This document shows, piece after piece, positions 11,543 through 50,246 of a stretch of 64,000 nt of DNA. Within the stretch, counting starts at the first letter, position 1. Each line of letters starts with the position of its first letter. The stretch spans positions 1-64,000 of the IMG/VR virus record IMGVR_UViG_3300023049_000005; one strand, written 5' to 3'. A program made the position numbers and the translations under genes. Below the pieces are notes generated by a model, which had not been told where the DNA came from, did not search any database, and saw only the letters and a program-made list of their open reading frames with translations.

Positions 11543-11583
11543 AGCAAATTAGATACCAATAGATATTAAGTGACATTATGGCA
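11543..11583 (-). promoter_or_regulatory. sigma54-type -24/-12 promoter with upstream TGNCA-N3-TGTCA box (hsp20)
   Basis: Minus strand TGCCATAATGTCA-N12-TGGTATCTAATTTGCT; same layout upstream of dnaK. Confidence 0.6.
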
Positions 11584-11682
11584 CTATGTCTGCAATATTT
11601 TCATGTAGATATAAATAATTAAATGAAATAACTCAAAACTTTATACTAATAAATCTATATAAAAGAAAATATAAACCAATTA

Positions 11683-12540
11683 ATGAAACCAATTTATAAA
11701 TGGACAGGTGGAAAAAGAAAAGAGATTGATATAATCAGAGAATACACACCACAATATATTAAAGAAGAAAAAGAATATACTTTCATAGAACCATTTTTTG
11801 GTGGCGGTGCTGTGTATTGGAATTTAGAAAACAATGATAATATCATAAATGATGTTGATACCGAAGTAATAAATTTTCTTAATACTATAAAATCTAATCC
11901 CAACGAAGTATCTAAAGTATTAGATCAGTTAAGTAAAGATATAGCAATCATAACAACAAGAGAAAAAAACGAAGAATTATCTATATCAGAAGCAAAAACC
12001 GAAAGAGGTAAATATTTCTATGAGTGGAGAAATAAAGATAGAGACGGTGGAATGACTAACTTATCTGAAATAGAACGTGCTATTCGATTTTATATAGTGA
12101 ATCAGTTATCATTTAATGGTATGAGAAGATTTAATAATAAGGGAGAATTCAATGTACCTTATGGTAATTATAAAACATTTAATAGACAATACACGGAAGA
12201 TCATATTTCTTTATTACATAATACTACAATAAACTGTGGTGATTATAGAGATATTATTAAAAAGACTGATAAAGATACTTTTGTGTTTATTGATCCTCCT
12301 TATACAAGAGAATTTAATGAATATAGCCACGGCAATTCTTTTGGCAATAAAGAACAAATGGAGCTTTGTGATTTATTCAAGAGTTCAGATTGTGATATAA
12401 TGATCGTAATCAATAAAGATGATTTCACGACTGAATTATATGACGGATATATTAAGGATGTATATGAATTAAAATACTCCACTAATATCAAGAATAGATT
12501 CTCGAATACAGTGGAGCATTTAATGATCACTAATTACTAA
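11683..12540 (+). CDS. Dam-like (D12 class) DNA adenine methyltransferase
   Basis: KWTGGK, FIEPFFGGGAV, FNVPYG, FIDPPY. Confidence 0.92.
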   Translation: MKPIYKWTGGKRKEIDIIREYTPQYIKEEKEYTFIEPFFGGGAVYWNLENNDNIINDVDTEVINFLNTIKSNPNEVSKVLDQLSKDIAIITTREKNEELSISEAKTERGKYFYEWRNKDRDGGMTNLSEIERAIRFYIVNQLSFNGMRRFNNKGEFNVPYGNYKTFNRQYTEDHISLLHNTTINCGDYRDIIKKTDKDTFVFIDPPYTREFNEYSHGNSFGNKEQMELCDLFKSSDCDIMIVINKDDFTTELYDGYIKDVYELKYSTNIKNRFSNTVEHLMITNY

Positions 12541-12549
12541 AAATTGGTA

Positions 12550-13533
12550 CTATTTCACTAGTTTGAATTTTTTGCCTTCCTTAGCAGCAACAGTATTATA
12601 AAATTCTAGTAGAGCTTTTACAATATGTTTTACTTTTTTACCATCAAGGAAATCTTTGCTTTCCAATTCGTTAATCACACTCTTTTTAGTAAGCATTTTT
12701 TCGAAAATTCTACGCTCATAATTTTCATATGAATAGAGGTTAACAACGGCTCTTTGGAAATATCTATTTCTAACTGTTTTTCCTGAGAGTTTTTTAGGTA
12801 AATCCATAAGCATCCAATCTAGAAAATCAATTACTTCCTTTTCAGATCTAACAAATCTTAGATCCCCGTTGTTAAAAGGTTTGTGTATAGTAGCTGCACT
12901 AAACGCCTTATGACCCGTGATGAGCATTCTGAGTTCATTGTGCTGAATACTCTTGTACTGTATAAGCTTTTTGTTATTATACCTGTCGTATATCTTTTTA
13001 TACTTAGTATAAGTATTACCTTTCTTAGTACCACTTTTCTCTTGTTGAACAAAGTGTTTTAAGTAGCCGTTCACATCCCAAGGTTTACCTTGTTGTATCG
13101 CAGCTAGATCAGCTTCTGTTACATTTTTACTAATGAAGAAATAAACAGGAAGTTCTAAGGCTGCTCTTGCTGCAAGTCTATGTTGTCCGTCCATCACACG
13201 CAAATCAGAATCCATCATAAAGGGAATATCTAAGTCTTTCCCATTATCGGAAATTTCTTTCTTCCACCATTCGATTTGTTTTCGATTCTTGTCACGGTTT
13301 GATTCGACTATACTAAACGAATCATAACTCTTTGTCTTGAAAATGATATTCTCAATTCCTACATCCATTCCCTTAGCTTTCATTTTAGCTAAAGTCTCTA
13401 GATATCCTGATTCTTCCATCTTAGTCAAGAACTGCGCAATAAGTTCATTCTTATACATTTCTACTGCAAGTGATTGGTTTCTACTCGTAGCCTTTTTTGC
13501 TACTTTTTTCTTTGGGGTTGCTATACTAGCCAT
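12550..13533 (-). CDS. ParB/Srx-like domain protein (paralog A)
   Basis: SNR..., IPFM...VMDGQHRLAA. Confidence 0.65.
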   Translation of the reverse strand: MASIATPKKKVAKKATSRNQSLAVEMYKNELIAQFLTKMEESGYLETLAKMKAKGMDVGIENIIFKTKSYDSFSIVESNRDKNRKQIEWWKKEISDNGKDLDIPFMMDSDLRVMDGQHRLAARAALELPVYFFISKNVTEADLAAIQQGKPWDVNGYLKHFVQQEKSGTKKGNTYTKYKKIYDRYNNKKLIQYKSIQHNELRMLITGHKAFSAATIHKPFNNGDLRFVRSEKEVIDFLDWMLMDLPKKLSGKTVRNRYFQRAVVNLYSYENYERRIFEKMLTKKSVINELESKDFLDGKKVKHIVKALLEFYNTVAAKEGKKFKLVK

Positions 13534-13554
13534 AATATACTTATTTAGGTTAAA

Positions 13555-14442
13555 TTATTTATTTTTACTAAGGATGTATTTCTTTCCTTTCTTTTTCGCT
13601 ACTTCGTTATAGAAGTCCAATACTTTTGTTACTTTATCTTCTGCTTTTGCTTTCTTGATAAAATCAAATTCTTCTAAACTATTTGCGTATTTCTTTATCG
13701 AAATCATTTTCTCGAAGATATCTTTATCAAAATTATCATATGAGTATAAATTAACGACTGCTCTTTGGAAGTATCTATCCCTTACTAAATCACCTTTTAA
13801 TTTAGTTGGTATAAAATAGAACATCCACTCCAAAAACTGATTCACTTCCTCGTATGATCTGACGAATTTCATATCACCTCTCTCAAACGGAGCTTTGATA
13901 CTCTTGCTACTAAATGCAGCATGTCCCATCACAATCATTCTAAGTTCGTTGTGGTTGATCCACCTCTTTGCCTTTTGATTAAACTTATCATAGATTACCT
14001 TATATTTTTTATATGCGGTATTTCCTTTTTTGGTGAAATACTTCAGGTAATCTTTAATTGTCCATTTGTTCCCTTTCTGTAGATCAGCAATATGCTCTTT
14101 TTTGATATTTCTGCTGATATAAAACAAAATAGGTAAACCTAATTTTTTTCTACCACCAAATCTATGTTGTCCCTCAAGTATATTCATGTTTTCGTCAACA
14201 ATAATTGGGATGTCTAAATCCTTTTTCTTTTCCCCTATTTCTACGACCCACCTTTCTACTGCTTTCGTATCGATATCTCTGTTTTCGGGAAGAAAACTAA
14301 AAGCATCATAATTGAAAGTCTGAAAATGAAAGTTATTAATTTTCATATCAGGTGTTTTACTGAGTACGTCAATTAAAAATTCGTCATTGATATTTATTGA
14401 AAATGACTTTTGTTCTTTTGTTGCTATTTTTTGTTTACACAT
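13555..14442 (-). CDS. ParB/Srx-like domain protein (paralog B)
   Basis: ENRDID, IPIIVD..ILEGQHR; shares HNELRM, FVRS, RYFQRAVVNLYSY with paralog A. Confidence 0.65.
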   Translation of the reverse strand: MCKQKIATKEQKSFSININDEFLIDVLSKTPDMKINNFHFQTFNYDAFSFLPENRDIDTKAVERWVVEIGEKKKDLDIPIIVDENMNILEGQHRFGGRKKLGLPILFYISRNIKKEHIADLQKGNKWTIKDYLKYFTKKGNTAYKKYKVIYDKFNQKAKRWINHNELRMIVMGHAAFSSKSIKAPFERGDMKFVRSYEEVNQFLEWMFYFIPTKLKGDLVRDRYFQRAVVNLYSYDNFDKDIFEKMISIKKYANSLEEFDFIKKAKAEDKVTKVLDFYNEVAKKKGKKYILSKNK

Positions 14443-15220: not shown

Positions 15221-15224
15221 TCAT

Positions 15225-17208: not shown

Positions 17209-20200
17209 TTATAGGAAACTTTTAAGGTCTTTCAAATCATCTGACCAAAGATCTTTTGGTGATTTCTTTTTCAATGCATTATATTCAGCTTTCTTATTCT
17301 TTAATTTCTCTGAAAGTTCATCTACTTTCTCTTTAGTTAAACTATAAATAGGCATACCTAATAGGTAGTCATATGAATCATTATATAGATCAAATTTATT
17401 CTTCTTTAAATCTTTAATAATGATATCTTTCTTTCTATTATTCACTTTAAGCTCATCTTTGATAACCATCTTAATAAATCTAACCTGATTATCTAATTTA
17501 GTTTTCTCGACGTTTAATACATCTAATAGACTTTTCTTTCTCTTAGTATAATCATCTAATCTCTTATCATAAAATACATCAATGATTTCTTCTACTTGGT
17601 CAAATTTTCTGATATTACCATCTACAAATAAGTGCATATTAGAAGTATATAATCTAGAAGATAATTTGAATTTATCAATTAGTTTCTCCTTTTTAGAAAC
17701 CTTCATCATATTCTCTCTACTTATTGTAATAGTAATATCTACTTCTTGCTCGGTACTATTATCTAAAAATTCTTTGATGAATTTAGCTTCAATTAACTTA
17801 TGTAAATGCTCAGTGAAGTTATGTGTCCAATATCCAATAGGTAACTCTGTTATTCTAACAGTAGTAGTGTTAACTATATCTACATTACCGTAAGTAATAT
17901 ATCCATTGTCAGTTTCTTCAATAGATCCTTTAAACCCGTTATAATGTGGATGGATTCTATGTGATTTCTTACCACTCATTTTATTCTCTATTACTCTAAT
18001 CAAATCATTAGGATTATATTTAGGAATATATGTTGACCAACCTGTGCCAATACCTTCTGCGCCATTCACTAACACCATTGGTATAATAGGCTTGAAATGC
18101 TTAGGTTCGATGACTACACCATCTTCTTGTAAATATTCTAAGATATCTTCATCTCTTTTATCAAATATAGTTTTAGTAGCATCACTTAAAAATGTATTAA
18201 TATATCTTGAACTCGCAGCATCTTTACCACCTTGTAAACGTGTACCAAAGTTTCCATTAGGTACAAGTAAAGGAATGTTATTCGATCCCACAAAATCTTG
18301 TGCTAGGTTTACAATACCCATTTCAAGAGACTGTTCACCATGATGGTATTTTTGTGTCTCTTTAACTGATCCACCAAGAGATGATACAGGAGTATCTTTA
18401 ATAATATTCCTCTTTATTACTGTATTCATAATCTTTCTATGAGATGGTTTTAATCCATCATATAGATCAGGAATAGATCTGATGTTATCTTCTAATGAGA
18501 AACCAATCATTTCATTATTAATAAAACTAGATATAGGTGTTGGAGTTTTATATTTAACCACATCTTTAACATTATTCTTAATCATCCAATCTTTTCTTTC
18601 ATCACTTCTAGATTTATTAAATACTAAATCAATATAATCATGATTCTTGTCTGTATCCCAATTAAACGGAAGAAGGTGATTATTAAGGTCAGAAAAATAC
18701 TCTTTAGCTTCCTTAGCCGTAGAAGTACCCAATCCTTTATAATACTTAACACTCCATCCCTTAACATCAGTGGCTAACCATTTCTGATATTCTTTTATAG
18801 TATAGAAACTTTTCACTTGTTTTGCTTTTCTTACTTTAAGAATAGGAGTAATGAATTCATATAAGATGTCCAATTTTAACAGTTCGGGCCAATTATCCTC
18901 AAAAAAGTTAATCAACAGCCCTTTAATATGGATACCATCCAAATCTGAATCTGTTAGAATGATTATCTTCCCATATCTCAAATCTGATGTATCTTCATAT
19001 TTCTTACCGAACTGAAGTCCAACGATATCTAATAAACTTTGGATCTCTTTATTTCTTTTAATCTTCTGTGCAGACGTATCTCTCGTATTAAGTATCTTTC
19101 CTTTAAGTGGGAAAGCACCATAATAATCTCTACCTACAATTGACATACCTGCTACAGCAAAACCTAATGCTGAATCTCCTTCTGTTAATAATAAAGAACA
19201 TTTATCACTTTCTCTTGTACCCGCTTTATTAGCATCAACGAGCTTAGGCATATTCACATTAGATTTTTTACCACCGCCCATTTTCTTCAATTGAAGCTTT
19301 TCTCTCATCTCCATTTCTTCTATGATAGCCTGATATATATCAGACTTCATTACCTTACGGATAGTGTTATCTTTAACCTCAACATTCTGATGAATATCAA
19401 CAGTCATTTTATTTGTTAAATTCTCTTTAGTCTGTGTATCAAAAGTTGGATTAGGTATTTTACATACTAAAAATATATGTAGTTTATTCTTTACGTCTTG
19501 CCAACTAACTTTCTTCTTAATCTTACCTGCAATTTGTTTAGCTAAATTAAGTGACACATGATTAATATGTGTACCACCTCTATGTGTAGTAATACCATTA
19601 CAAATAGAATTAAATACAAAACCGTGTTCATTAGATTTAGCAATTCCTATTTCCCAACCATTATCCATTTGTTCATAGAAAAAGTCTTGTCCTTCCTCTA
19701 AGTGTAATTTCATATAATCACTTAATCTCTTAATAGGTAATGTTTTACCATCTAAGCTGATTCTAACATCAGGTATATAAGCAGCTACATCTAAACATCT
19801 TTTATACATAATCGATTTTAAATCCTCTGTTAAAGAATCAAAATCAAATTGTGAATAATCAGGATAATATGTAATACGTGTGAAACTTTTGGTGTCCTTA
19901 ACATTGGTGATCTCAGGTTCTTCGATATCTTTCATGTTGTTCTTACTCCATTGACGGTACATCTTTTTACCATCACAACACTCTACTTTGAATTTCTTTG
20001 AGAATACGTTACAAAGTTTAGCACCAAGACCATTACGCCCACCCGTTAATCTTTTTTCAGTATCATCATAATTCTCTCCTGTTAATAAATGACTAAATAT
20101 TAATTCAGGATTATATACTTTTTCTTTACTGTGTTTTTCTATCGGAATGGTCGGTCCGTCATTCTCTATTACAATCTTCTTATCATCAATAATAACTTTG

Positions 20201-20445
20201 ATCATTTTAACCTTACCTGTGCGAATAGCGTGATCCGATGCGTTGGTTAATATTTCATCATATAACTTAATAAAGGCAGGGTTATGATTAACCTTCTTCT
20301 TTTCTATTACTATATTATTTAGATCATTATCTTTAATAACGAACATCTCTTGTTCTTCTGTTACCTTAGATCCAACATAGGTTTCTGATCTTTTTAGGAT
20401 GTGTTCTCTTTGACTTAACTTTACATACTTATTCTCTTTAGCCAT
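17209..20445 (-). CDS. single-polypeptide type IIA DNA topoisomerase (ATPase, TOPRIM and breakage-reunion domains fused)
   Basis: DEILTNASDH, GGRNGLGAK, TEGDSA, PLKGKILN, DSDLDG, YYKGLGTS, DGLKP, YHHGE, catalytic SRY. Confidence 0.96.
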   Translation of the reverse strand: MAKENKYVKLSQREHILKRSETYVGSKVTEEQEMFVIKDNDLNNIVIEKKKVNHNPAFIKLYDEILTNASDHAIRTGKVKMIKVIIDDKKIVIENDGPTIPIEKHSKEKVYNPELIFSHLLTGENYDDTEKRLTGGRNGLGAKLCNVFSKKFKVECCDGKKMYRQWSKNNMKDIEEPEITNVKDTKSFTRITYYPDYSQFDFDSLTEDLKSIMYKRCLDVAAYIPDVRISLDGKTLPIKRLSDYMKLHLEEGQDFFYEQMDNGWEIGIAKSNEHGFVFNSICNGITTHRGGTHINHVSLNLAKQIAGKIKKKVSWQDVKNKLHIFLVCKIPNPTFDTQTKENLTNKMTVDIHQNVEVKDNTIRKVMKSDIYQAIIEEMEMREKLQLKKMGGGKKSNVNMPKLVDANKAGTRESDKCSLLLTEGDSALGFAVAGMSIVGRDYYGAFPLKGKILNTRDTSAQKIKRNKEIQSLLDIVGLQFGKKYEDTSDLRYGKIIILTDSDLDGIHIKGLLINFFEDNWPELLKLDILYEFITPILKVRKAKQVKSFYTIKEYQKWLATDVKGWSVKYYKGLGTSTAKEAKEYFSDLNNHLLPFNWDTDKNHDYIDLVFNKSRSDERKDWMIKNNVKDVVKYKTPTPISSFINNEMIGFSLEDNIRSIPDLYDGLKPSHRKIMNTVIKRNIIKDTPVSSLGGSVKETQKYHHGEQSLEMGIVNLAQDFVGSNNIPLLVPNGNFGTRLQGGKDAASSRYINTFLSDATKTIFDKRDEDILEYLQEDGVVIEPKHFKPIIPMVLVNGAEGIGTGWSTYIPKYNPNDLIRVIENKMSGKKSHRIHPHYNGFKGSIEETDNGYITYGNVDIVNTTTVRITELPIGYWTHNFTEHLHKLIEAKFIKEFLDNSTEQEVDITITISRENMMKVSKKEKLIDKFKLSSRLYTSNMHLFVDGNIRKFDQVEEIIDVFYDKRLDDYTKRKKSLLDVLNVEKTKLDNQVRFIKMVIKDELKVNNRKKDIIIKDLKKNKFDLYNDSYDYLLGMPIYSLTKEKVDELSEKLKNKKAEYNALKKKSPKDLWSDDLKDLKSFL

Positions 20446-36586: not shown

Positions 36587-39500
36587 ATGTGGGATTATTC
36601 CTCAATAGAAGACAATTTTAAAAAGAGAACAGGAAAGCTTGATAAAAAGACATTTAACTTTCTTAGACAAGAAATAGATTCAGTTCGCTTTTATTCTAAG
36701 TGTTTAGATGGAAGTAGCTATGTTTATTCTGATGACTTAAATAATATTTATGACCTTCAGTTTAGAGACTATAATACTTATAAAATAAGCAGCGAATATT
36801 CTACATATTATAACGGTGGTGATGCTGATGGTATTGCTATTGATAGACAAGGAAACAGTGATCTTGGATTTTATAACAGATATAAAAACGATTATGGTTA
36901 TACAGTTAAAAACTTATTTAGTCCTAAGCGTTTATTTAATTATACAAATTATTATAACGTAGACCTTGCTACTACTCAACCAATAGACTTCGATCTAGTT
37001 GATGATAAACTTACTATTGATGGAGAAATTGTGATAATCGGACAAAGAATACTAGTAAAAGATAATATATCTACTGTAACATTAGACAGTAGTATTGATG
37101 CTGAAACATTTTTAAACACTGACGTAACAGTTGTTCAAACTATTGGTGGACAAATAACTTATCAATATTCTAATAACGAGAATGGTGTTTATAGATACGA
37201 TGGTTTACAACTTATAAGAGAAAACGATTTAGATACAGTAGATAATGTCAGAAATTATTCTGTGTATGTAAAATTAGGAAGCAGTAATATAACAAAAAGT
37301 TTCCATTTAAATAGATTAACAAACGGGGCATTTCCTTTAATAACCAATAATGAAAATATATCATTTACAGAAAAAAATGATTATGTGATCAGAAATTCTG
37401 TTGATTATAGAAACGTACTTGATAATAATTTTGCTACATCGTTGGCTCAACTTGAAACAGTATTTAGTTTCAGGGGTAATACATATGATATACCAAATAG
37501 AAATATTACAGTTGGTGATTTTGGCTTGATATTAAATTACCAAAATAACTATATGAATATTGTTAAAAACAGATTCAAAGAAGATCTCAAAGATATCATA
37601 GAATTAAATAATAAGTATCTAATCGTTGGTAACAACGGCACTCTTTTATCTATGGATAAAGTTTACTTTGATCTAAGTATTATCGAAATTGATTCTATTG
37701 AGGATCTACTTTCAATTGATATTAGAAACGGTAAAGGAATTATAGTAGGATCGAACGGTAGTATATTAACATCTATTAATAATAATAATTGGAATGAATT
37801 AGATAACCCAATAGAAAATAACATTAATGCAGTACAATATTTTAATTTAGCTAAGGCTAATTATATAGGAAATAATGGGGTTTTTGGTGAGGTTAATGTA
37901 AGCGGAGATCAGTTTAAAATAACAGAAAAAGAATTAACTATTCGTCCTAATTTATTCGACGAAAGGATAATAAGAGATGATTTACATAACATAAATAACG
38001 TAGAAATAGAGAACCAATTTTTCAAATACACAGGTGCAGATTGGGTAGACATACCTAAAGATATAAACAGTAGCTTTAGTTTTGATTTTAGTTTCAAACC
38101 AACAGACTTAGAAGCTAATGATACACAAGTATTATTCTCTATTACACCTACACCTTCGGCTACACAAAGCGCAGTTAATATTAAAGGGTTTAAAGTGTTT
38201 ATTGAAAAAGAAAATAATGATTATAGACTTAGATTATCGATTACTGATCCAAATGGAAATGAAGTTAAATTAGATGGTGATATATCTCTTTCTAATGATA
38301 AATGGTATAAAGTATTCATAACTCGTTTCAAAAACGAATATGAATTTTTTGTGAATAATAGATTAGGCGCAGAAACAGCATTGGGCTTTGATAGTAACTT
38401 TGATAACTTCAATGATACTATCAGATTAGGTGCGGAATTAACATATGATTTTAATAATTCACAATATTTAACTGCAAGTTATAATAACTTTATTGGTACA
38501 ATTGATAATGTGAGATTATGGGATAAGCGTTTAGATAACCAAGAAGTATTTAGTTATGGTAATTACTATTCAGATGATTTACCAAATCTAGTTACTTGGT
38601 ATAAATTTAAAGTAACTAAGAACGCTAGTGGTGATAAAATAATATTAACAAATGATGTAGTAGATAATAGATCTCTTTCGTTACCAAGTAATTCTAATAT
38701 AACTTTTTATAATGCAAATACTTCGGCTACTGCGATGTTAGAAATTGAATTATTTAAGGGAACGTCCATCATAGGAGATAATATAATTGTATTTGATTTA
38801 GAAGATCAATCTAATTATTCAGATATAACAACTAATACACAGTTTTATATTACATTTGATAATGAAAGCCCTAAGAACTTACGATATTATAGTACAGATG
38901 GTTATTATTATGGGGTATCTGATCAGAGAAGTTTTAGAATAGATTCATTTAAATTAGACTTCAACTTACTGAATTATATCAATGATATAGAAGTAGAATT
39001 AGAACCTATTTCAAATAAAGGATATGACAATTTAAGTATAAACTTTAACCTTCAAGAATTATTATTAATCGGAAGTGTAGAAAATAATGAGATTGATAAA
39101 ATCGATCTCAATAATGTGTGTGTTATACAACCTGTTGATAGATTAGAAGGTTGTACTATATCTTCTACTGTTTCGATAATAGACACTACAAATAGTATTG
39201 ATATTGAAAATGATTATAAAGATAATGTAACAGACGAAGTTAATGTTTGTAGCATTAACTATATTAAAGCATTAGGTTTCCCTTCGTCAACACAATCAGT
39301 ATGTACGTTCTATGTACCTAATGGTGATGGACAACCATTTGATCTTTATCAAGAAGTGTATTTAGTGGGAGAAGTAGAAGATCAATTAAATGGATATTTT
39401 GAGGTTAGTTTTAACGGAGTAGACTTTGAAGAAATAAGAGGTAATGGTGAATTTATCGTACCATTAGGAGTAGGGGCAGATTCATCTCTAACATTTAGAA

Positions 39501-42500
39501 CACGATTAGCAGAAGGTGCTGATGGTAATAAAGTAAAAGGATTAATTAAGAATTTAAAAGTATATGATAATTGTGTTAGAGATTTGTTCCCTGAACAGTA
39601 TACAGGTAATGCAGTAGAAGTTAAGAAATTATACTTTTCTCAGTTTGATAAAACGACTGAGGTTGATAAGATAACAGCTAGTAACTATTTATATTCATAT
39701 ATAGATCTTAAGAGCTTACAGATAAATAATATTGAAGAAATAAATTTAGCTACATATCAATCAGAGGGGTTTCCTGTGAGATTATTTGAATCACAAGTAG
39801 TTAATAATGCACTTGTGAACTGTCAAAATACAGGATTATGTTCAAGATCTACTTTCTTAACTAATAATACTATAGACAGAATTCAATACGGACTTGGATT
39901 ATCGCTTAGTTTAACAGGTGATGATTATGTATATAATAATACATCATATAATTTATTAGAACCACTTACATTAACTAATGTTCAATTATTTGGAATCGAT
40001 GATCATGAAGTGGGTGGATTAAATAGTCCATACCACATAGGTTTTGATATTTCTAAAAATTTCTATTTTGAAGTGGATTCAGTAATAATAACAGAAGAAG
40101 ATCTATTAAATAGTGATATCACAAATGGTGCATATATTACCCAATCTGTTGAAATGTCAGCGACATCATCATTAGGTTCAGGATTAGCAGCAGATGTGTT
40201 TAATCAAATAGTGTTCACAGGTAGTTTAGCCACATATAGTGTACTTACTGATGTAACATTAAATGAGAATTCTAAATATTTATTGGAATTGGAAATAGAC
40301 GGTGATCTTGATTTCACATTCGGTACAAACTCATATTCAGTAACGGGATCTAATACATTTGTTAGTCAGATAGTAGAGGTAAACCAAGATAGTGATTTTA
40401 TTGTAATGAAAGCAAACTCTAACACTACTATTACTAACTTAGTTGTATCAGATCGAGTTCCAACTAAGTCATTCATTAAATGGGATACAGAAACATGTGA
40501 TCTAACATATAAATTAAGTGGTGTTAGTGTAGAAGAAGGATTCATTCAAAGTGATGGTGAAAGATTTTTACCACAGTGTGTGTTACAACAAGATTGTGAT
40601 ATAACAGTGGAGAGTATAGTGAATACTCAATATTGGGAAGACTATGATCCGAAATTACTTTTCTTAAACTATGATGTAGCCAATAAATTATATTTCTTTG
40701 ATTTAGAAACAGGAGAATACCAACTTCCACAAAACGCTCAGTTATTCGATGTAAGAGAATTAACAATAGAAAGCCTTAGTGGGGAAAAGTCTTGGTTAGA
40801 TTACGTAAGAGATACGACAAAAGAATTTTTATATGCTGCTGTGAAATCAACAGGCAATACAGTCCCTTGGTCAAATTCATTTATATTATGTGGTAATATT
40901 ACTTCATATACTTTAACATTAAATACTAATACTACAAACGATCTTTCGGAGATCAACGGTGTAGCATCAGGATTATTACCTAACTATGCAACGGGTAGTA
41001 CAATATCAATTGGTGTGCCACCTGTTTCAAAGGATGTTTATTTATATAAAAATGCTATGGTAATAAAAATACCAACAACGTTTGATATAGAAATAGGAGA
41101 TGTTATTAAGTTTACGAACAGTTTAATAGATATAAATTTAATTACAATCGATCTTTTAGATGATGGTGGGAATACATACGCATATTTCAAAACAGGATTC
41201 GATGATTACTTAATTAGTAGATTAGTAAGTTGGACAAAGACAACTACTATAACTAACTTAAACAGATTTAAAGACATAGATGAACTATTATTAAATTTTA
41301 ATCTCCATCCAATTAGTATAGGATATACTTTATCAGAAATAAATGGCGGTGTTGAACTATCACCTAAGTATAATTACCAAACAGCATACTATAATTTACA
41401 GTGTAATATCTCTGTTAGAAACAATGATTTAATTGTTACGGATACTCAAATGAGATATAGAGATAAAGTGACATTATTTGATTATTCTCCTAATTATAGC
41501 ATATTATCATATTTAACTAAAGATAGTCGATTTGATGCAAGTTTTAAATTAAGATCGTTGCCTGAATATAATTTCCCTAATAATAACAGTGGAGTATTAT
41601 ATACACTTTCAACAGGTGAGATATCATTCAATTCTAGCTTAAAAGCAGAGTGGGAATCTATTCCAATATACACTTTCATAGATCTAGTATATGATACTGC
41701 TTCAATAAGAAGTGTATTAATAATGAGTAAAAATTATGATGAAGTAACAGAAAGATATATTATTAAGACATATGATTATTATGATGATGTAATTCAACAA
41801 TCTGATTTAACAGGAGCTAATTTTAATTTAAGAGTAAGAAATACACTTGGTGAAATATCAGAAGATCTTAAAAAACTTGATAATATCCAAAGGGTTGAAT
41901 CTGATGAATATGATATTACGAATTTAAATGCTACTATTTTCAGTAGTTATAAAAACTTAAAATCAGATCTTAACTTCAAACCATATACAGATAGTTATGC
42001 GAAGGCATTCTTATCACAAAAAGAAATAAAAGAATATTTAAGTGGTATAGTTTATACCGACTTTAATAATAACTTAGCGATGAATATCATAAATCTAACT
42101 AAGGATGATTATTTCCCAATCACAGGTATTAGTAAGTATTATATAGATTGTGAAGATTGTGTTCACGATAATTTTATATCATTTGATGGATTTAATCAGT
42201 TCTCTTATTTTGGAGCAGCTACAAGTTCAACGAATCGTGTACCATTCGAAACATATGGGTTTAATAATCAAATTCAAGTTTTTGGGGCAACAGGTGCTAC
42301 ATTTGTAGATATACCATTAAACTATGCAACACAAAGTGGTACGTCATCAAGAATGATAGAATTCGATATACAAGAATTAGAAAACGCAACAATAGAATTA
42401 AGAAAAGGTGGAACAAGTTTAACAACAATTAGCCGTGTCCCAAATGAAATAACTAAAGTTCAATTTATATCAGATGATACAAGTGATCTATTATTTAGAA

Positions 42501-44653
42501 TAAATTATGATCCTGAAAATAGAACAGTTATAAATGATATAAGAGCAGGTGATATAGAATGTTTAGATAATTGTTATTTAACAACATTAAGAATACCTGA
42601 TCATGGATTACAAATCGGTGATGAATTTACAGTTAAGATAGAAGATGATATTTTTGAATTAGTTAATTTATATGAATCTGATTTTGCTTTCGCAACACAA
42701 AGTGGTTGGGTACAAAATGTGAATGGCGTAGAAACTGCTATCCCATTACTTAATGGACAGATAGATGACTATTCTGTAGTAAATAGTGTTGATAGTATCT
42801 ATTATGATCAACCAATTGGTGTTACTGTTGGAAGAACATATAGAATAAGTTTTGATTACAGTATGTTCGCATTTGGTGGCGGCACACCTAGTTTAGATGT
42901 AGCTTTCGGGGCAACACCTTCTCCTACATTTAATACAGTAATTAATGAATTAAGTGTAGCGAATAATCAAAGAGTAGAAACTAATTTTATTGCAACTACT
43001 TCTAGTATATACGTAGGATTCAATACAGAAAATCCTCAAATATTGACACTTCGTAATATAACAGTAGATGATATAACAAATAGGAGTAAGTATTATGATG
43101 GTAGACAAATAGCCTTTGATGTATTAAATGAAGATGTGATTGTAATTGATACAGATTATATTGGTGATGTAGTAGAAACATCAGCTACTTATACTGCGAT
43201 AAACCCCTGTGGTAAAAAAGTAATTAGAGAAAGAATAACTTCTCTTGTTGGTACAATAAGCGTATCAGAGTTCGATCCTTATTTGAATTATGAGCCAATA
43301 GATCTATATGATTTAGGTAATGATAATAAGATTAAGTACCCTACGGAGATAAACGATATTAATTGGAATATTAATGATGAAGTAGTTAATATAACAGGAA
43401 TTGATAATAACCCATATAGGTTTAGGTTAATTGATAATTTAACTTTTGATGAAATATTAGATAAATATCCTTGGTTATTAGAAGCTGAAATAAGAAATGC
43501 TGTTATTGGTAAAGATCAGAACGGATTAGTATGGTACAAAGGTACATGGGATTGTGGAAGATGGTTAGGTGGTACTTGGTATTCAGGTACATGGAAAACA
43601 GGAGTATGGTATAACGGTACTTGGTTTAATAGTAGAGTAACAACAGATAATAATAGTGCTACTATCGATGTGATAGATGCTTTCGGTGATTATAGTGTAT
43701 GGAAAGGTGGAACATGGTTCAACGGTACTAAGAAAGGTGGTCGTTGGGAATCAGGTGATTGGTTTGATGGTACTTGGGAAAAAGGCGATTGGTTAGGTGG
43801 CACTTGGAGAGGTGGTACATGGATAGACGGTAATTTCAAAAGAGGTAATTGGTTTGATGGTACATGGACAAAGGGTACATTCAATTCTGATTTTGGATTG
43901 AGTAGATGGTTTGATGGTAATTGGCTAAGAGGTGATTTTGAAAACGGTATATGGTTCAAAGGAAGATTCGAAAGTATCGGAGCGCAATCTACATTTGGTA
44001 ACAGAGCTACATTATCTAGAAAAGCTATTTGGGAAAATGGTTTTATGGTAGCAGGAACAGTTAATAGTGGAGATAATAGTAGACATGATCTTACGGTTTG
44101 GAAAACAGGTAGAGCTAATTTCCTATTATGGAATGGTGGTACAATGTTCCAAAACAATATAAACAATTGTGTATGGCAAGACGGTGTTGTTAAAGACATT
44201 GATATATTAGCTTTCTATGGGGATAATACAGGTGATTACTATTTTATAGTAGACGGAGAATATCGTTTCGAAGATGGTAATAACTTTTGGGTAATCAATA
44301 ATGACACATATAATCCTATATATGGCGCAGATACTACACCGAATAGATATACAGTTGATTTAGATTATCTAAGTTTAGATAACGGAAGGTTGACTAAGGT
44401 ATATGTTTCTAATCTACCTAGTGCTTTACTTGCTGTGATAAATAATAACGGAAGTTACGTAGAAGGGTTTTCTGATAATAATAATCCTGTTGATACAGAA
44501 GTAGATGGTACAATATTAACTAAATTAGTATCTGAGTTCTCTAAGACGAGTTGGTTTAATGGTAGAATCGAGAACTGTATATTTGATGATAGATTTATCA
44601 GAAGTGTGTATTGGGAAAACGGTTACTTCAAATCAGGTGATTTTGGATTTTAA
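36587..44653 (+). CDS. giant (2688 aa) virion structural/adhesion protein
   Basis: Tail-fibre-type VDLATT..IDG..RILVKD..ENGVY motif, propeller-like VGNNG repeats, LamG-like KWY..F.GTIDNVRLW, C-terminal GxW pentapeptide repeats. Confidence 0.75.
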   Translation: MWDYSSIEDNFKKRTGKLDKKTFNFLRQEIDSVRFYSKCLDGSSYVYSDDLNNIYDLQFRDYNTYKISSEYSTYYNGGDADGIAIDRQGNSDLGFYNRYKNDYGYTVKNLFSPKRLFNYTNYYNVDLATTQPIDFDLVDDKLTIDGEIVIIGQRILVKDNISTVTLDSSIDAETFLNTDVTVVQTIGGQITYQYSNNENGVYRYDGLQLIRENDLDTVDNVRNYSVYVKLGSSNITKSFHLNRLTNGAFPLITNNENISFTEKNDYVIRNSVDYRNVLDNNFATSLAQLETVFSFRGNTYDIPNRNITVGDFGLILNYQNNYMNIVKNRFKEDLKDIIELNNKYLIVGNNGTLLSMDKVYFDLSIIEIDSIEDLLSIDIRNGKGIIVGSNGSILTSINNNNWNELDNPIENNINAVQYFNLAKANYIGNNGVFGEVNVSGDQFKITEKELTIRPNLFDERIIRDDLHNINNVEIENQFFKYTGADWVDIPKDINSSFSFDFSFKPTDLEANDTQVLFSITPTPSATQSAVNIKGFKVFIEKENNDYRLRLSITDPNGNEVKLDGDISLSNDKWYKVFITRFKNEYEFFVNNRLGAETALGFDSNFDNFNDTIRLGAELTYDFNNSQYLTASYNNFIGTIDNVRLWDKRLDNQEVFSYGNYYSDDLPNLVTWYKFKVTKNASGDKIILTNDVVDNRSLSLPSNSNITFYNANTSATAMLEIELFKGTSIIGDNIIVFDLEDQSNYSDITTNTQFYITFDNESPKNLRYYSTDGYYYGVSDQRSFRIDSFKLDFNLLNYINDIEVELEPISNKGYDNLSINFNLQELLLIGSVENNEIDKIDLNNVCVIQPVDRLEGCTISSTVSIIDTTNSIDIENDYKDNVTDEVNVCSINYIKALGFPSSTQSVCTFYVPNGDGQPFDLYQEVYLVGEVEDQLNGYFEVSFNGVDFEEIRGNGEFIVPLGVGADSSLTFRTRLAEGADGNKVKGLIKNLKVYDNCVRDLFPEQYTGNAVEVKKLYFSQFDKTTEVDKITASNYLYSYIDLKSLQINNIEEINLATYQSEGFPVRLFESQVVNNALVNCQNTGLCSRSTFLTNNTIDRIQYGLGLSLSLTGDDYVYNNTSYNLLEPLTLTNVQLFGIDDHEVGGLNSPYHIGFDISKNFYFEVDSVIITEEDLLNSDITNGAYITQSVEMSATSSLGSGLAADVFNQIVFTGSLATYSVLTDVTLNENSKYLLELEIDGDLDFTFGTNSYSVTGSNTFVSQIVEVNQDSDFIVMKANSNTTITNLVVSDRVPTKSFIKWDTETCDLTYKLSGVSVEEGFIQSDGERFLPQCVLQQDCDITVESIVNTQYWEDYDPKLLFLNYDVANKLYFFDLETGEYQLPQNAQLFDVRELTIESLSGEKSWLDYVRDTTKEFLYAAVKSTGNTVPWSNSFILCGNITSYTLTLNTNTTNDLSEINGVASGLLPNYATGSTISIGVPPVSKDVYLYKNAMVIKIPTTFDIEIGDVIKFTNSLIDINLITIDLLDDGGNTYAYFKTGFDDYLISRLVSWTKTTTITNLNRFKDIDELLLNFNLHPISIGYTLSEINGGVELSPKYNYQTAYYNLQCNISVRNNDLIVTDTQMRYRDKVTLFDYSPNYSILSYLTKDSRFDASFKLRSLPEYNFPNNNSGVLYTLSTGEISFNSSLKAEWESIPIYTFIDLVYDTASIRSVLIMSKNYDEVTERYIIKTYDYYDDVIQQSDLTGANFNLRVRNTLGEISEDLKKLDNIQRVESDEYDITNLNATIFSSYKNLKSDLNFKPYTDSYAKAFLSQKEIKEYLSGIVYTDFNNNLAMNIINLTKDDYFPITGISKYYIDCEDCVHDNFISFDGFNQFSYFGAATSSTNRVPFETYGFNNQIQVFGATGATFVDIPLNYATQSGTSSRMIEFDIQELENATIELRKGGTSLTTISRVPNEITKVQFISDDTSDLLFRINYDPENRTVINDIRAGDIECLDNCYLTTLRIPDHGLQIGDEFTVKIEDDIFELVNLYESDFAFATQSGWVQNVNGVETAIPLLNGQIDDYSVVNSVDSIYYDQPIGVTVGRTYRISFDYSMFAFGGGTPSLDVAFGATPSPTFNTVINELSVANNQRVETNFIATTSSIYVGFNTENPQILTLRNITVDDITNRSKYYDGRQIAFDVLNEDVIVIDTDYIGDVVETSATYTAINPCGKKVIRERITSLVGTISVSEFDPYLNYEPIDLYDLGNDNKIKYPTEINDINWNINDEVVNITGIDNNPYRFRLIDNLTFDEILDKYPWLLEAEIRNAVIGKDQNGLVWYKGTWDCGRWLGGTWYSGTWKTGVWYNGTWFNSRVTTDNNSATIDVIDAFGDYSVWKGGTWFNGTKKGGRWESGDWFDGTWEKGDWLGGTWRGGTWIDGNFKRGNWFDGTWTKGTFNSDFGLSRWFDGNWLRGDFENGIWFKGRFESIGAQSTFGNRATLSRKAIWENGFMVAGTVNSGDNSRHDLTVWKTGRANFLLWNGGTMFQNNINNCVWQDGVVKDIDILAFYGDNTGDYYFIVDGEYRFEDGNNFWVINNDTYNPIYGADTTPNRYTVDLDYLSLDNGRLTKVYVSNLPSALLAVINNNGSYVEGFSDNNNPVDTEVDGTILTKLVSEFSKTSWFNGRIENCIFDDRFIRSVYWENGYFKSGDFGF
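43532..44180 (+). repeat. GxWxx pentapeptide repeat coding region (probable beta-helix)
   Basis: KGTWDCGRWLGGTWYSGTWKTGVWYNGTW and following repeats. Confidence 0.85.
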
Positions 44654-47780: not shown

Positions 47781-47810
47781 AAAAGAGAGTATTTCTACTC
47801 CCTTTCTTTT
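47781..47810. terminator. probable bidirectional terminator between convergent genes
   Basis: GAGTA-TTTC-TACTC stem flanked by A and T tracts. Confidence 0.5.
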
Positions 47811-48166
47811 TAATTTAAAGCTTCGTTTATATTTGCTTCTCTGTGATCGATGATTAAATTATTTGTCCTCATTATATTTACCATAGTATGTGGAGATAAT
47901 ATCTCACTGTTTTGAATAAAGTACTCTTTGATTTCTTTATTTTCAATACCAAAAACATTATTATCATATTTTGATAAATATTCTGATATCATTTCACGCA
48001 TATCATATGAATTTGCTTCTCTCTTAATAACACTTAAATAAAAATCTCTTTCTTCTTCTGTTAACTTAAAGATAGCATCAAAATCAATTTGATATCTTAA
48101 CGATTGTTTAGGCATTGTATCTATCTCTTCGATATCGTGACCTTTTGTAGTTTCTACTTTTTCCAT
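47810..48166 (-). CDS. hypothetical protein with C-terminal RExxIN tag
   Basis: Ends REANINEALN. Confidence 0.7.
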   Translation of the reverse strand: MEKVETTKGHDIEEIDTMPKQSLRYQIDFDAIFKLTEEERDFYLSVIKREANSYDMREMISEYLSKYDNNVFGIENKEIKEYFIQNSEILSPHTMVNIMRTNNLIIDHREANINEALN

Positions 48167-48218
48167 AATAATCTTTTTGTTTATTATATCAAAAAATAAA
48201 CAAAAAGTTTAAGCATAA

Positions 48219-48247
48219 AAAAAGAGGAACATTACATTCCTCTTTTT
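48219..48247 (-). terminator. intrinsic terminator after dnaK
   Basis: AAAAAGAGGAA-CATTACA-TTCCTCTTTTT. Confidence 0.75.
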
Positions 48248-48266
48248 AAAAATAAATATTAAATGA

Positions 48267-50156
48267 TTATTCATCATCTTTCACTTCCTCAAAATCTACA
48301 TCATTGACTTCTTGTTCAGTGTTATCTGTTGAACCTTCCTCTGTATTAGATTCTTGTTCTTGTTGATATAACTTAGTAGAAATAGTAGACCAAGACTGTT
48401 GAAGATCTTCCATCAATGAATCAATAGAATCTAGATCTTTATTCTCATGTGCTTCTTTTAAAGCTTTAGACTTTTCTTCTAACTCAGTTCGATCAGAATC
48501 TTCTAACTTATCTTCGCTTTCTTTGATGAATTTCTCAGTTGAAAAAATTAACTGATCCGCAGAGTTTAGTTTATCAACTTCCTCTTTCTTTTTCTTATCA
48601 GCTTCTGCGTTTTCTTCCGCATCTTTCTTCATTTTCTCGATTTCTTCGTCTGACAGTTGACCGCCATTTTCGATTCTAATATCGTTTTCTTTACCCGTAG
48701 CTTTATCAACAGCTTTAACTGTTAATACACCATTAGCATCGATATTAAAACTAACTTCGATTTGTGGTACTCCTCTTGGAGATGGTGGAATTCCATCTAA
48801 GTGAAACGTACCTAGTGTCTTATTGTCGGTAAAGAACTCACGTTCTCCTACACCAACATTAATCTGAACACTTGGTTGATTATCACTAGCCGTACTATAC
48901 ACTTCCTTCTTTTCAGCAGGGATAGTAGTATTGGCTTCGATCATCTTAGTGAATACACCACCCATTGTTTCAATACCCATACTCATTGGAGTAACATCCA
49001 ATAGAAGAATATCTTCTACTTCATTGTTTAATACACCACCTTGTATAGCAGCACCTAGAGATACGACCTCATCAGGGTTAACACTCTTATTGGGTGCTTT
49101 ACCAAAGAATTTTTCAACAGCTTCTTGTACAGCAGGAATTCTAGTAGATCCACCCACTAAGATTATCTCATCGATATCACTATTCTTAATACCTGCGTTT
49201 TTCATTGCGTTCTTACACGGCTTCAAAGTTCTAGCAATAAATGAATCGATCAATTTATTGAACTCACTTCTAGAAAGAGTTTTCACGTAATGTTTAGGAT
49301 TGTTATCTACTACCGTAATATAAGGCAAGTTAATTTCAGTTGAAGTAGTAGATGATAATTCTATCTTAGCTTTTTCAGCAGCTTCTTTCAATCTCTGTAA
49401 TGCCATAGAATCTTCTTTTAGATCCATACCATTTTCTTCTTTGAACCCATCATTTAACCAATCGATTAATATTTCATCTACATTATCACCACCTAAATGA
49501 ACATCACCATCAGTAGACTTAACCTCAAATACACCATCACCTAGATCTAAGATAGAGATATCAAATGTACCACCACCTAAATCATATACTGCGATAGTTT
49601 TATCTTCTTCGGTTTTATCTAAACCATATGCTAATGCTGCAGCAGTAGGCTCATTGATAATTCTTTTTACCTCAAGACCTGCAATTTTACCTGCCTCAAT
49701 AGTAGCGTTTCTTTCTTGGTCATTAAAGAAAGCAGGAACTGTAATCACACATTCCTTAACATCTTGTCCTAGATAAGACTCAGCAGATTTCTTTAACTTT
49801 TGTAATATCATTGAAGATATTTCTTGTGGTGTGTATTCTCTGTCTCCGATCTTTACCACAGGGATATTTGCTTTATTTTTCACTACTTTAAAAGAAACGT
49901 TTTTTATTTCGTTTTTTACTTCATTGTAGTTCTTCCCAATAAATCTTTTAATTGAGAATACTGTGCTTTCAGGATTGGTTACCATTTGTCTCTTAGCACT
50001 ATCTCCTACTTTTCTTTCACCATCTTCTCCAAATGCTACAATAGAAGGCGTAGTTCTTTTTCCTTCTTCGTTATTAATAACAGTAGCTTTACCGCTTTCG
50101 ATTACTGATACACAACTATTTGATGTACCTAAATCAATTCCTATAATTTTACCCAT
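48267..50156 (-). CDS. dnaK: Hsp70 chaperone DnaK
   Basis: [54 protein letters not shown]. Confidence 0.98.
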
Positions 50157-50205
50157 AATTTTTATTTCTTTTTTTATTTAGTTATTACTAATATAATTAC
50201 TATTA

Positions 50206-50246
50206 ATCAATATGAATGCCATTGTATATAACATGACATACTGACA
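50206..50246 (-). promoter_or_regulatory. sigma54-type promoter with upstream TGNCA-N3-TGTCA box (dnaK)
   Basis: Minus strand TGTCAGTATGTCA-N12-TGGCATTCATATTGAT. Confidence 0.6.

What the first reader, a model, noticed from the sequence alone, without database searches (positions are those of the whole stretch)
11543..50246. hsp20 and dnaK share a sigma54-type promoter plus a 13-bp operator at identical spacing
Seen, 39 kb apart on the minus strand: TGCCATAATGTCA-N12-TGGTATCTAATTTGCT (11583-11543) and TGTCAGTATGTCA-N12-TGGCATTCATATTGAT (50246-50206). Established: the sigma54 consensus is TGGCAC-N5-TTGC(A/T). Inference: the phage chaperone genes plug into a host sigma54-dependent heat-shock circuit with a TGNCA-N3-TGTCA regulator site next to the -24 box, separate from the phage early/middle/late cascade.
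Basis: partly seen in the sequence, partly recalled or inferred. Interest (0 to 1): 0.65.

Follow-up and report, generated by a model that had tools for sequence, protein, structure and literature searches.

The report
Phage chaperone genes use host heat-shock promoter
A 270-kb freshwater phage puts its own hsp20 and dnaK genes behind the sigma-54-type heat-shock promoter and 13-bp enhancer site that its Bacteroidota hosts use for their chaperone genes, so the phage chaperones are probably switched on by the host's protein-stress circuit.

Summary
The composite TGNCA-N3-TGTCA / N12 / TGGYAT-N5-TTGM occurs exactly twice in the whole 270,756-bp phage genome, 50-51 nt before the ATG of hsp20 and of dnaK.

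The same composite precedes dnaK, hsp20, htpG, grpE, clpB, groES and lon across Bacteroidota: 95 of 120 genome hits. It also precedes hsp20, dnaK or groES on at least 32 other viral contigs.

Published TSS maps put the start 11-13 nt after the TTG box in B. thetaiotaomicron. In F. psychrophilum the same genes are assigned to a sigma-54 motif. So the sigma-54 reading is well supported, though no rpoN mutant data exist.

The 13-mer behaves as an enhancer rather than a repressor operator. In an unbiased genome sample it sits 12 to 105 bp upstream at 10.5-bp steps.

The best candidate binder is a sensor-less AAA+/HTH_8 activator. It is single-copy in 31 of 31 genomes sampled and lies beside groESL in 16 of them. 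It is also the only such activator in a 0.5-Mb genome that keeps rpoN.

The host circuit is already published. The phage wiring, the phased enhancer and the activator assignment appear to be new.

The parts
11571..11583 (-). 13-bp enhancer (UAS) site TGCCATAATGTCA upstream of hsp20; its 3' end lies 12 nt from the -24 box
   Evidence: the same 13-mer form with N12 spacing precedes host htpG, hsp20 and dnaK
11579..11591 (-). overlapping second 13-mer AGACATAGTGCCA, giving a third half-site 8 bp upstream (distance 20 to the -24 box)
   Evidence: triple half-site clusters are also seen upstream of host groES
11553..11558 (-). -24 element TGGTAT (GG at 11557-11556) of the hsp20 promoter
   Evidence: TGGTAT is the commonest -24 form at host hsp20 (10 of 22)
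11544..11547 (-). -12 element TTGC of the hsp20 promoter
   Evidence: TTGC occurs in 14 of 22 host hsp20 promoters
11531..11533 (-). predicted transcription start of hsp20 (inferred, not measured)
   Evidence: inferred from B. thetaiotaomicron TSSs, which lie 11-13 nt after the base following TTG
11112..11492 (-). hsp20 gene (126 aa, small heat-shock protein)
   Evidence: Pfam HSP20 E 3.8e-18
50234..50246 (-). 13-bp enhancer (UAS) site TGTCAGTATGTCA upstream of dnaK, 12 nt from the -24 box
   Evidence: related phage contigs carry TGACAAAATGTCA and AGACAAAATGTCT at the same spacing
50216..50221 (-). -24 element TGGCAT (GG at 50220-50219) of the dnaK promoter
   Evidence: TGGCAT occurs in 25 of 33 host dnaK promoters
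50207..50210 (-). -12 element TTGA of the dnaK promoter
   Evidence: TTGA occurs in 31 of 33 host dnaK promoters
50194..50196 (-). predicted transcription start of dnaK (inferred, not measured)
   Evidence: inferred from B. thetaiotaomicron TSS geometry
48267..50156 (-). dnaK gene (629 aa, Hsp70)
   Evidence: Pfam HSP70 E 2.4e-247; 62-65% identical to Flavobacteriaceae DnaK

Best explanation
Each phage gene sits behind a copy of the Bacteroidota heat-shock control region. This region is a sigma-54-type -24/-12 promoter (YGGNAY-N5-TTGM) plus a 13-bp site, TGNCA-N3-TGNCA. The site lies two helical turns upstream of the -24 box, centred near -44. Host RNA polymerase carrying sigma-54 (RpoN) would bind the promoter as a closed complex. 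A host enhancer-binding ATPase bound at the 13-mer would open it when the cell senses protein-folding stress. The most likely activator is a sensor-less AAA+/HTH_8 protein built like PspF, encoded beside groESL. The phage encodes neither sigma-54 nor such an activator, so its hsp20 and dnaK would be expressed with the host chaperone regulon, for example when infection itself creates folding stress. The -24 and -12 variants differ between the two phage promoters exactly as they differ between host dnaK and hsp20. The genes were therefore probably captured with their own promoters, and the promoters were then kept by selection. Shown: the motif, its distribution, the TSS geometry in hosts, and the phasing. 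Inferred: RpoN dependence in the phage, the identity of the binder, and the timing of expression.
For: The motif is unique to the two chaperone genes in 270 kb. Related phage contigs with DnaK only 57-61% identical keep the same architecture while their flanks differ. A genome-wide scan of 185,579 species genomes returned 120 loci, about 85% from Bacteroidota. Of these, 95 lie 25-150 nt before DnaK (40), HSP20 (22), HtpG (18), GrpE (5), ClpB (5), GroES (3) or Lon (2). In four host genomes a relaxed pattern found 21 sites against 3 for the reversed control, mostly at dnaK, hsp20, grpE, clpB and htpG. B. thetaiotaomicron dRNA-seq shows HtpG with the full composite: 13-mer at -50 to -38, GG at -24/-23, TTG at -14 to -12. 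Three more stress genes there have TGGCAY-N5-TTG with the TSS 11-13 nt after the base following TTG. F. psychrophilum motif SM4, a sigma-54 -24/-12 motif anchored on TSSs, covers groESL, lon, dnaK, grpE-dnaJ, htpG and clpB. In an unbiased sample, 70 of 83 dnaK/htpG/groES upstream regions carry the promoter. The 13-mer sits at 12-13, 20-23, 31-34, 43, 53-56, 62-65, 74-77, 84-88 and 105 bp, a 10.5-bp periodicity with R 0.85, or R 0.80 without the N12-13 class. A 0.5-Mb genome keeps rpoN, one sigma-70-family factor and one activator (AAA+ plus HTH_8, no sensor domain). Its only well-placed promoter matches precede groES and dnaK. That activator is single-copy in 31 of 31 genomes and lies within about 3.5 kb upstream of groES, on the same strand, in 16 of 31. 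The phage lacks rpoN and activators. Gene-specific promoter variants match the host.
Against: No RNA data exist for this phage; only lake-water DNA runs hold it. I found no rpoN or activator mutant study for heat shock in Bacteroidota. The -12 box is usually TTGA or NTGA rather than the canonical TTGC, so the C of the GC doublet is not conserved. An enhancer centred at -44 is unusually close for this class of activator, which normally acts from -80 to -150. In P. gingivalis a different regulator, RprY, binds the dnaK, groES and clpB promoter fragments and was proposed to repress them. B. thetaiotaomicron grpE uses an ordinary sigmaA promoter in unstressed culture. The link between the PspF-like protein and the 13-mer rests on genomic context only.
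Confidence: 0.75

Rival explanations
1. The promoter is sigma-54-type, but the 13-mer is an operator for a heat-shock repressor, analogous to HrcA-CIRCE or HspR-HAIR, or RprY itself. On this reading it is not the binding site of the activator.
For: In P. gingivalis RprY shifts dnaK, groES and clpB promoter fragments, and expression data suggested repression. The proximal site at -44 abuts the polymerase footprint. Many bacteria control chaperone genes with palindromic operators (established knowledge).
Against: The 13-mer never overlaps the -24/-12 core or the transcribed region. It occurs anywhere from 12 to 105 bp upstream, but only at 10.5-bp steps. That pattern is typical of face-of-helix activation and is not needed for occlusion. 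RprY did not bind htpG, yet htpG carries the clearest 13-mer. The window holds no CIRCE or HAIR sequence. Sigma-54 promoters need an activator, and the only one left in the 0.5-Mb genome has a DNA-binding domain.
Confidence: 0.13
2. The -24/-12 likeness is coincidental. On this reading the promoters are read by the host primary sigma (a -33/-7 type promoter) or by the phage's own sigma-70-family factor.
For: TTTG is also the core of the Bacteroidota -7 box TAnnTTTG. The -12 C is not conserved. The phage encodes a sigma-70-family protein at 68.8 kb of its genome. In B. thetaiotaomicron one DnaJ-like gene with TGGCGT-N5-TTGC starts only 4 nt after the C of that TTGC, which is the -7 box geometry.
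Against: The identical element precedes chaperone genes in bacteria that carry no phage. The TSS lies 11-13 nt after the base following TTG (the G of TTG at -12 to -14), not with that G at about -6 as in sigmaA promoters of the same data set. GG-N10-G spacing is invariant, including 30 of 30 groES promoters. A one-turn spacing between elements does not fit sigma-70-family promoters. A genome with only one sigma-70-family factor and rpoN keeps this promoter at groES and dnaK.
Confidence: 0.06
3. The control regions are inert passengers that were copied with the genes from a host and are no longer used by the phage.
For: Each promoter has the gene-specific host variants, which points to co-capture. 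There are no expression data for the phage.
Against: DnaK proteins of related phage contigs have diverged to 57-61% identity, yet GG, TTG, the half-sites and the N12 spacing are kept while the spacers differ. At least 32 further viral contigs keep the composite before hsp20, dnaK or groES. The intergenic regions are short (125 nt for dnaK) in a genome that is 87% coding. Unused sequence would be expected to decay.
Confidence: 0.06

Closest known systems
Sigma-54 motif SM4 and co-expression cluster B254 of Flavobacterium psychrophilum (Guerin et al. 2021, PMC9723704)
   Same: It is a -24/-12 promoter, anchored on mapped TSSs, upstream of groESL, lon, dnaK, grpE-dnaJ, htpG and clpB in a flavobacterium. 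This is the host circuit that the phage copies.
   Different: It was described for a bacterial chromosome. No enhancer site was reported and no activator was assigned (three candidates are mentioned). No phage genes were involved.
PSSM survey of sigma-54 regulons (PLoS One 2025, PMC12316311), which cites Sabree et al. 2009 on Blattabacterium
   Same: It predicts sigma-54 promoters enriched before GroEL, IbpA, GroES, GrpE, DnaJ, DnaK, HtpG, ClpB and Lon in Bacteroidota. My 0.5-Mb genome result parallels the endosymbiont case.
   Different: It is purely a promoter prediction. It mentions no 13-mer, no phasing and no phage. The 2009 paper was not available to read.
Canonical sigma-54 promoter TGGCAC-N5-TTGCW (Barrios et al. 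1999; established knowledge)
   Same: It shares GG-N10-G spacing, the TGGCA core, the TTG at -14 to -12, and a TSS about 12 nt downstream.
   Different: The C of the -12 GC doublet is usually A here (TTGA), or the box is NTG(A/C) at groES. The exact canonical string is barely above chance in three host genomes.
PspF-pspA system of E. coli (established knowledge)
   Same: The activator consists only of an AAA+ domain and a C-terminal HTH, without a sensor domain, so its control must come from a partner protein. It also serves a stress regulon.
   Different: NCBIfam scores for PspF are far below the cut-off (272 vs 443.55 bits), so the protein is not a PspF orthologue. PspF sites lie at about -80 to -126 with IHF, whereas here the sites can be at -44. 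About 90 residues link the AAA+ lid to the HTH.
HsfA/HsfB control of lonD in Myxococcus xanthus (from my own knowledge, not checked here)
   Same: It is a heat-shock gene driven by sigma-54 and an enhancer-binding activator.
   Different: HsfA is a response regulator in a two-component system. It belongs to a different phylum and controls a single gene rather than a whole chaperone regulon.
Phage auxiliary genes carrying host regulator sites, such as Pho boxes or NtcA sites in cyanophages and LexA boxes in temperate phages (from my own knowledge)
   Same: A phage gene is placed under a host stress or nutrient regulon by carrying the host's cis-element.
   Different: Those cases use sigma-70-type promoters with a transcription factor. 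Here both the alternative sigma promoter and its enhancer are borrowed.
Moraphages, large freshwater phages predicted to infect Flavobacteriia (Arch Virol 2025, PMC12619734)
   Same: They are freshwater jumbo phages encoding DnaK, DnaJ and HSP20, with DnaK nested in Flavobacteriaceae. This phage has the same gene set and habitat.
   Different: That paper does not analyse promoters. I did not test whether this phage belongs to that lineage.

Membership tests
Sigma-54 (-24/-12) promoter | GG and G(C) doublets exactly 10 nt apart, within TGGCAC-N5-TTGC-like boxes | tested here: met
   Both phage sites have GG-N10-G(C/A). The spacing is invariant in host sites, including 30 of 30 groES promoters. 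The C of the GC doublet is only partly conserved.
Sigma-54 (-24/-12) promoter | Transcription starts about 12 nt downstream of the -12 element | tested here: inconclusive
   This is met for four host promoters of the same type in published B. thetaiotaomicron dRNA-seq (11-13 nt) and for F. psychrophilum SM4. It was not measurable for the phage because no RNA runs hold it.
Sigma-54 (-24/-12) promoter | rpoN is present in the organism that transcribes it | tested here: met
   One rpoN was found in each of four host-type genomes and in the 0.5-Mb genome. The phage has none, so it must rely on the host. The actual host of this phage is not identified.
Sigma-54 (-24/-12) promoter | Expression depends on RpoN and on an AAA+ enhancer-binding activator | not testable with these tools
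   This needs rpoN and activator mutants or in vitro transcription. I found no such study for Bacteroidota heat-shock genes.
Enhancer (UAS) of a sigma-54 activator | A symmetric site upstream of the promoter, working at variable distance but on a fixed face of the helix | tested here: met
   Distances run from 12 to 105 bp in 10.5-bp steps, with R 0.85 (p about 1e-20) or R 0.80 for distal sites only. The p-values are inflated by the relatedness of the genomes.
Enhancer (UAS) of a sigma-54 activator | The site is bound by an activator with an HTH_8 DNA-binding domain | not testable with these tools
   A candidate exists: AAA+ plus HTH_8, single-copy in 31 of 31 genomes, next to groESL in 16 of 31, and the sole activator in a 0.5-Mb genome. 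Binding was not tested.
Bacteroidota primary-sigma promoter (-33 TTTG / -7 TAnnTTTG) | A TAnnTTTG box ending about 6 nt before the TSS | tested here: not met
   Neither phage site has TAnnTTTG in register. At host promoters of this type the G of TTG lies at -12 to -14, against about -6 for sigmaA promoters in the same table.
HrcA-CIRCE, HspR-HAIR heat-shock operators | CIRCE (TTAGCACTC-N9-GAGTGCTAA) or HAIR (CTTGAGT-N7-ACTCAAG) inverted repeat at the promoter | tested here: not met
   The window has no match with up to 3 mismatches. The P. gingivalis authors also found no CIRCE.
PspF orthologues | Score above the NCBIfam equivalog cut-off for PspF | tested here: not met
   The score is 272 bits against a cut-off of 443.55 (TIGR02974), and no other equivalog model is passed. 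The protein shares PspF's domain layout, not its family.

The most novel reading that the evidence does not exclude
Jumbo phages of Bacteroidota routinely place their own chaperone genes under the host's sigma-54 proteotoxic-stress enhancer, so that folding stress caused by infection itself turns on the phage chaperones. The proximal form of this enhancer, centred at -44 and two turns from the -24 box, implies a sensor-less activator that reaches the closed complex without DNA looping. That activator may be held in check by the chaperones it induces. This would be a previously undescribed geometry and feedback logic for sigma-54 activation.
Probability: 0.3. Interest if true: 0.72.

Novelty: new variant of a known kind. 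Interest (0 to 1): 0.58.

Why it matters
Heat-shock control in Bacteroidota has no sigma-32, HrcA or HspR. It is only partly understood: sigma-54 promoters have been mapped, but no activator or enhancer has been assigned. The phage sites led to three testable additions. The first is a 13-bp enhancer, TGNCA-N3-TGNCA, phased with the promoter. The second is one specific, universally conserved, sensor-less activator next to groESL. The third is evidence that large phages of this phylum hook their auxiliary chaperone genes into that circuit. If confirmed, this would be a rare case of phage genes depending on host sigma-54 and its activator. It would also give a compact, portable stress-inducible promoter for Bacteroidota genetics, and a sequence signature for host prediction of uncultivated phages.

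Tried and rejected
- **RNA evidence for the phage.** The look-up of sequencing runs found only lake-water DNA runs. Read laying on 49950-50450 showed identical contigs in four lakes and no variation in the motif, so it gave no population-level test and no TSS.
- **PM2 motif of Ryan et al. 2020.** Its elements lie at -10 and -30 and it is linked to oxidative stress. It is not this element.
- **SigmaA -7 box reading.** Rejected on register and on TSS distance.
- **CIRCE and HAIR.** Absent from the window.
- **RNA thermometer in the two predicted leaders.** The folds are no better than shuffles, with z about -0.4.
- **Canonical TGGCAC-N5-TTGCW scan.** I ran it on three host genomes as a source of non-heat-shock sigma-54 promoters to serve as controls. 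It gave 9 hits, mostly intragenic and near the control level, so it was not usable.
- **Phylum-level dnaK sample.** It was heterogeneous. Several lineages have dnaK behind hsp20, or TGGCAC-N5-TTTG with TGTCA repeats about 100 nt upstream. I therefore switched to a class-level sample.
- **REC-AAA+ activator without HTH.** It is syntenic with grpE-dnaJ and an ABC transporter, and I first considered it as the heat-shock activator. I ranked it second because the 0.5-Mb genome lacks it while keeping the HTH-bearing one.
- **Sabree et al. 2009.** The paper could not be read.


Full report
**The observation**

The window is the first 64 kb of a single 270,756-bp virus record with 30% G+C. On the minus strand, hsp20 (11112-11492) and dnaK (48267-50156) are confirmed by Pfam.
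- a 13-mer, TGCCATAATGTCA for hsp20 and TGTCAGTATGTCA for dnaK;
- exactly 12 nt of spacer;
- TGGTAT-N5-TTGC for hsp20 and TGGCAT-N5-TTGA for dnaK;
- about 50 nt of A-rich leader before the ATG.

The pattern matches nowhere else in the window or in the whole genome. With relaxed definitions the genome holds 99 promoter-like matches and 10 13-mers. They meet within 110 nt only at these two genes. The expected number at N12 is 0.0037, P about 7e-6. The phage also has a DnaJ homologue and a J-domain gene, but they lack the element.

**What it is**

Related IMG/VR contigs have DnaK only 57-61% identical. They still carry TGACAAAATGTCA or AGACAAAATGTCT, 12 nt, YGGNAY-N5-TTGA before dnaK, while the spacers differ.

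I scanned one genome per prokaryotic species with a strict form of the composite. The scan stopped at 120 loci, about 85% of them from Bacteroidota. In 95 of them the next gene, 25-150 nt away, belongs to a chaperone or protease family. Pfam confirmed representatives of each family.

| Downstream gene | Loci |
|---|---|
| DnaK | 40 |
| HSP20 | 22 |
| HtpG | 18 |
| GrpE | 5 |
| ClpB | 5 |
| GroES | 3 |
| Lon | 2 |

I then ran a relaxed pattern on four host-type genomes: Cellulophaga, Maribacter, Winogradskyella and a Bacteroides MAG. It gave 21 hits against 3 for the reversed control, mostly at dnaK, hsp20, grpE, clpB and htpG. The element is therefore the chaperone-regulon control region of Bacteroidota, and the phage carries two copies of it.

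**Is it sigma-54?**

Several lines of evidence bear on this.
- *TSS geometry in B. thetaiotaomicron.* Published dRNA-seq (PMC7366714, Supplementary Data 1) lists 50 nt upstream of each TSS. HtpG (BT_0897) shows the full composite, with the 13-mer at -50 to -38, GG at -24/-23 and TTG at -14 to -12. BT_0898, BT_0837 and BT_0565 have TGGCAY-N5-TTG with the TSS 11-13 nt after the base following TTG. Ordinary promoters in the same table have the G of TAnnTTTG at about -6.
- *F. psychrophilum.* A TSS-anchored analysis (PMC9723704) defines motif SM4 as a typical sigma-54 -24/-12 promoter. It lists groESL, lon, dnaK, grpE-dnaJ, htpG and clpB under it.
- *Regulon survey.* A 2025 survey predicts the same enrichment across Bacteroidota.
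- *Host and phage gene content.* Host-type genomes have one rpoN and 4-10 activators each. The phage has neither.
- *A reduced genome.* A 0.5-Mb genome of the same class keeps rpoN, a single sigma-70-family factor and a single activator. Of its nine TGGCAY-N6-TGM matches, only the two before groES and dnaK are intergenic and correctly placed.

These results make the sigma-54 reading strong. Direct dependence on RpoN has not been shown in any paper I could find. The -12 box also departs from the canon: it is TTGA at dnaK and NTG(A/C) at groES.

**The 13-mer is an enhancer, not a fixed-position operator**

I took 31 genomes drawn evenly from the class and collected dnaK, htpG and groES upstream regions without regard to the motif. 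Seventy of 83 regions carry the promoter 23-91 nt before the ATG. Upstream 13-mers lie at the following distances:

| Distance to the -24 box (bp) | Sites |
|---|---|
| 12-13 | 20 |
| 20-23 | 6 |
| 31-34 | 4 |
| 43 | 1 |
| 53-56 | 7 |
| 62-65 | 10 |
| 74-77 | 10 |
| 84-88 | 5 |
| 105 | 1 |

This is a 10.5-bp periodicity, with Rayleigh R 0.85. It stays at 0.80 when the N12-13 class is removed. The p-values are overstated because the genomes are related, but the pattern is plain. A site that works at many distances, always on one face of the helix and never over the promoter, is what an activator site looks like. htpG and hsp20 mostly use the proximal N12 position, as the phage does. dnaK and groES often use distal positions.

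**Candidate activator**

The single activator left in the 0.5-Mb genome has a Sigma54_activat AAA+ domain starting at residue 15, a lid, a linker of about 90 residues and a C-terminal HTH_8. It has no sensor domain.
- Orthologues at 48-74% identity are single-copy in 31 of 31 sampled genomes. Paralogues reach only 40-45%.
- In Cellulophaga, Maribacter, Winogradskyella, a Bacteroides MAG and another lineage the gene order is miaB (annotated in Maribacter), activator, two small genes, secG (annotated in Maribacter), groES, groEL.
- The activator lies within about 3.5 kb upstream of groES, on the same strand, in 16 of the 31 genomes.
- It passes no NCBIfam equivalog cut-off.

I infer, but have not shown, that this protein binds the 13-mer. 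Because it lacks a sensor domain, it would have to be controlled by a partner protein, as PspF is by PspA. Control by the chaperones themselves is a speculation.

**How the phage uses it**

Host dnaK promoters are TGGCAT (25 of 33) with TTGA (31 of 33). Host hsp20 promoters are mostly TGGTAT, TGGTAC or TGGAAT with TTGC (14 of 22). The phage dnaK and hsp20 promoters follow the same split, and their distances to the ATG match the host medians. Each gene therefore probably arrived with its own control region, which has since been maintained.

The case is not isolated. Among the first 119 viral-contig hits to the composite, 32 precede HSP20 (17), DnaK (12) or GroES (3). These are low-GC contigs, many over 100 kb.

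The rest of the phage looks like a Bacteroidota phage:
- only 6 of 258 ORFs have a Shine-Dalgarno-like sequence;
- TAnnTTTG boxes are enriched before genes;
- the phage has its own sigma-70-family factor.

The habitat (lake water) and the chaperone set match the recently described moraphages. That paper did not look at promoters.

**Verdict**

Two amendments apply: the -12 box is non-canonical, and the 'operator' is better described as a phased enhancer.

The host circuit is already published. The phage wiring, the enhancer with its phasing and the activator assignment are, as far as the held literature shows, new. They remain inferences until TSS mapping, mutants and binding assays are done.

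Noticed in passing
G000 (whole phage genome) 152898-153917 (+) and about 187697-187924 (+), outside the window: The phage also encodes a DnaJ homologue (32% identical to Maribacter DnaJ) and a separate J-domain ORF. Neither carries the sigma-54/13-mer element. The dnaJ ATG follows directly on an upstream ORF.
   Followed up: partly
G000:C1:68810-69010 (+), outside the window (locus L322): The phage encodes a sigma-70-family factor (Sigma70_r2, E 4e-13, open frame 297 aa). It may run part of the phage's own transcription programme.
   Followed up: no
window 17209-20445 (-): A 1078-aa ORF fuses GyrB-like ATPase, TOPRIM and GyrA/ParC-like domains, giving a single-chain type II topoisomerase.
   Followed up: no
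window 11683-12540 (+): A Dam-type N6-adenine methyltransferase gene is transcribed divergently from hsp20. It shares the 190-nt intergenic region that holds the enhancer cluster.
   Followed up: no
window 36587-44653 (+): A very long ORF of 2688 aa; I did not examine it.
   Followed up: no
window 58521-58533: A perfect 13-mer (TGCCATAGTGACA) lies inside ORF 58125-58646 with no promoter-like box nearby. It is probably a chance occurrence.
   Followed up: partly
L173:6437-7600 (Maribacter), L174:58-1269 (Bacteroides MAG); also G001:C18 and G003:C23: A second conserved activator has REC plus AAA+ plus lid and no DNA-binding domain (about 387-403 aa). It lies 5.6-7 kb downstream of grpE-dnaJ, after an ABC-2 transporter pair, in both Bacteroides and Flavobacteriaceae. 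Its role is unknown. It is absent from the 0.5-Mb genome.
   Followed up: partly
host groES upstream regions, e.g. L286, L288, L293, L296, L307: The distal 13-mers before groES are often embedded in a hairpin followed by a T-run. The hairpin is built from TGTCAG/CTGACA, so the terminator of the upstream gene and the enhancer appear to share sequence.
   Followed up: no
L177, L186, L190, L193, L195, L199, L201, L203, L206 (phylum-level sample): In several other Bacteroidota lineages dnaK lies directly behind an hsp20-like gene with no promoter of its own. Others (L194, L198, L200) have TGGCAC-N5-TTTG with TGTCAG...CTGACA repeats about 100 nt upstream.
   Followed up: partly
window 50227-50262: In three lake metagenomes a second contig matches only these 36 nt, which span the 13-mer and the sequence just upstream. 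Its flanks differ and contain another TGACAATGTCA. This suggests a relative with a similar enhancer region.
   Followed up: no
B. thetaiotaomicron BT_1243 (grpE), from PMC7366714 Supplementary Data 1: In unstressed culture grpE starts from an ordinary TACCTTTG -7 box, and a TGTCAATCTGGCA 13-mer lies over the -33 region. This hints at dual promoters or another use of the site.
   Followed up: no
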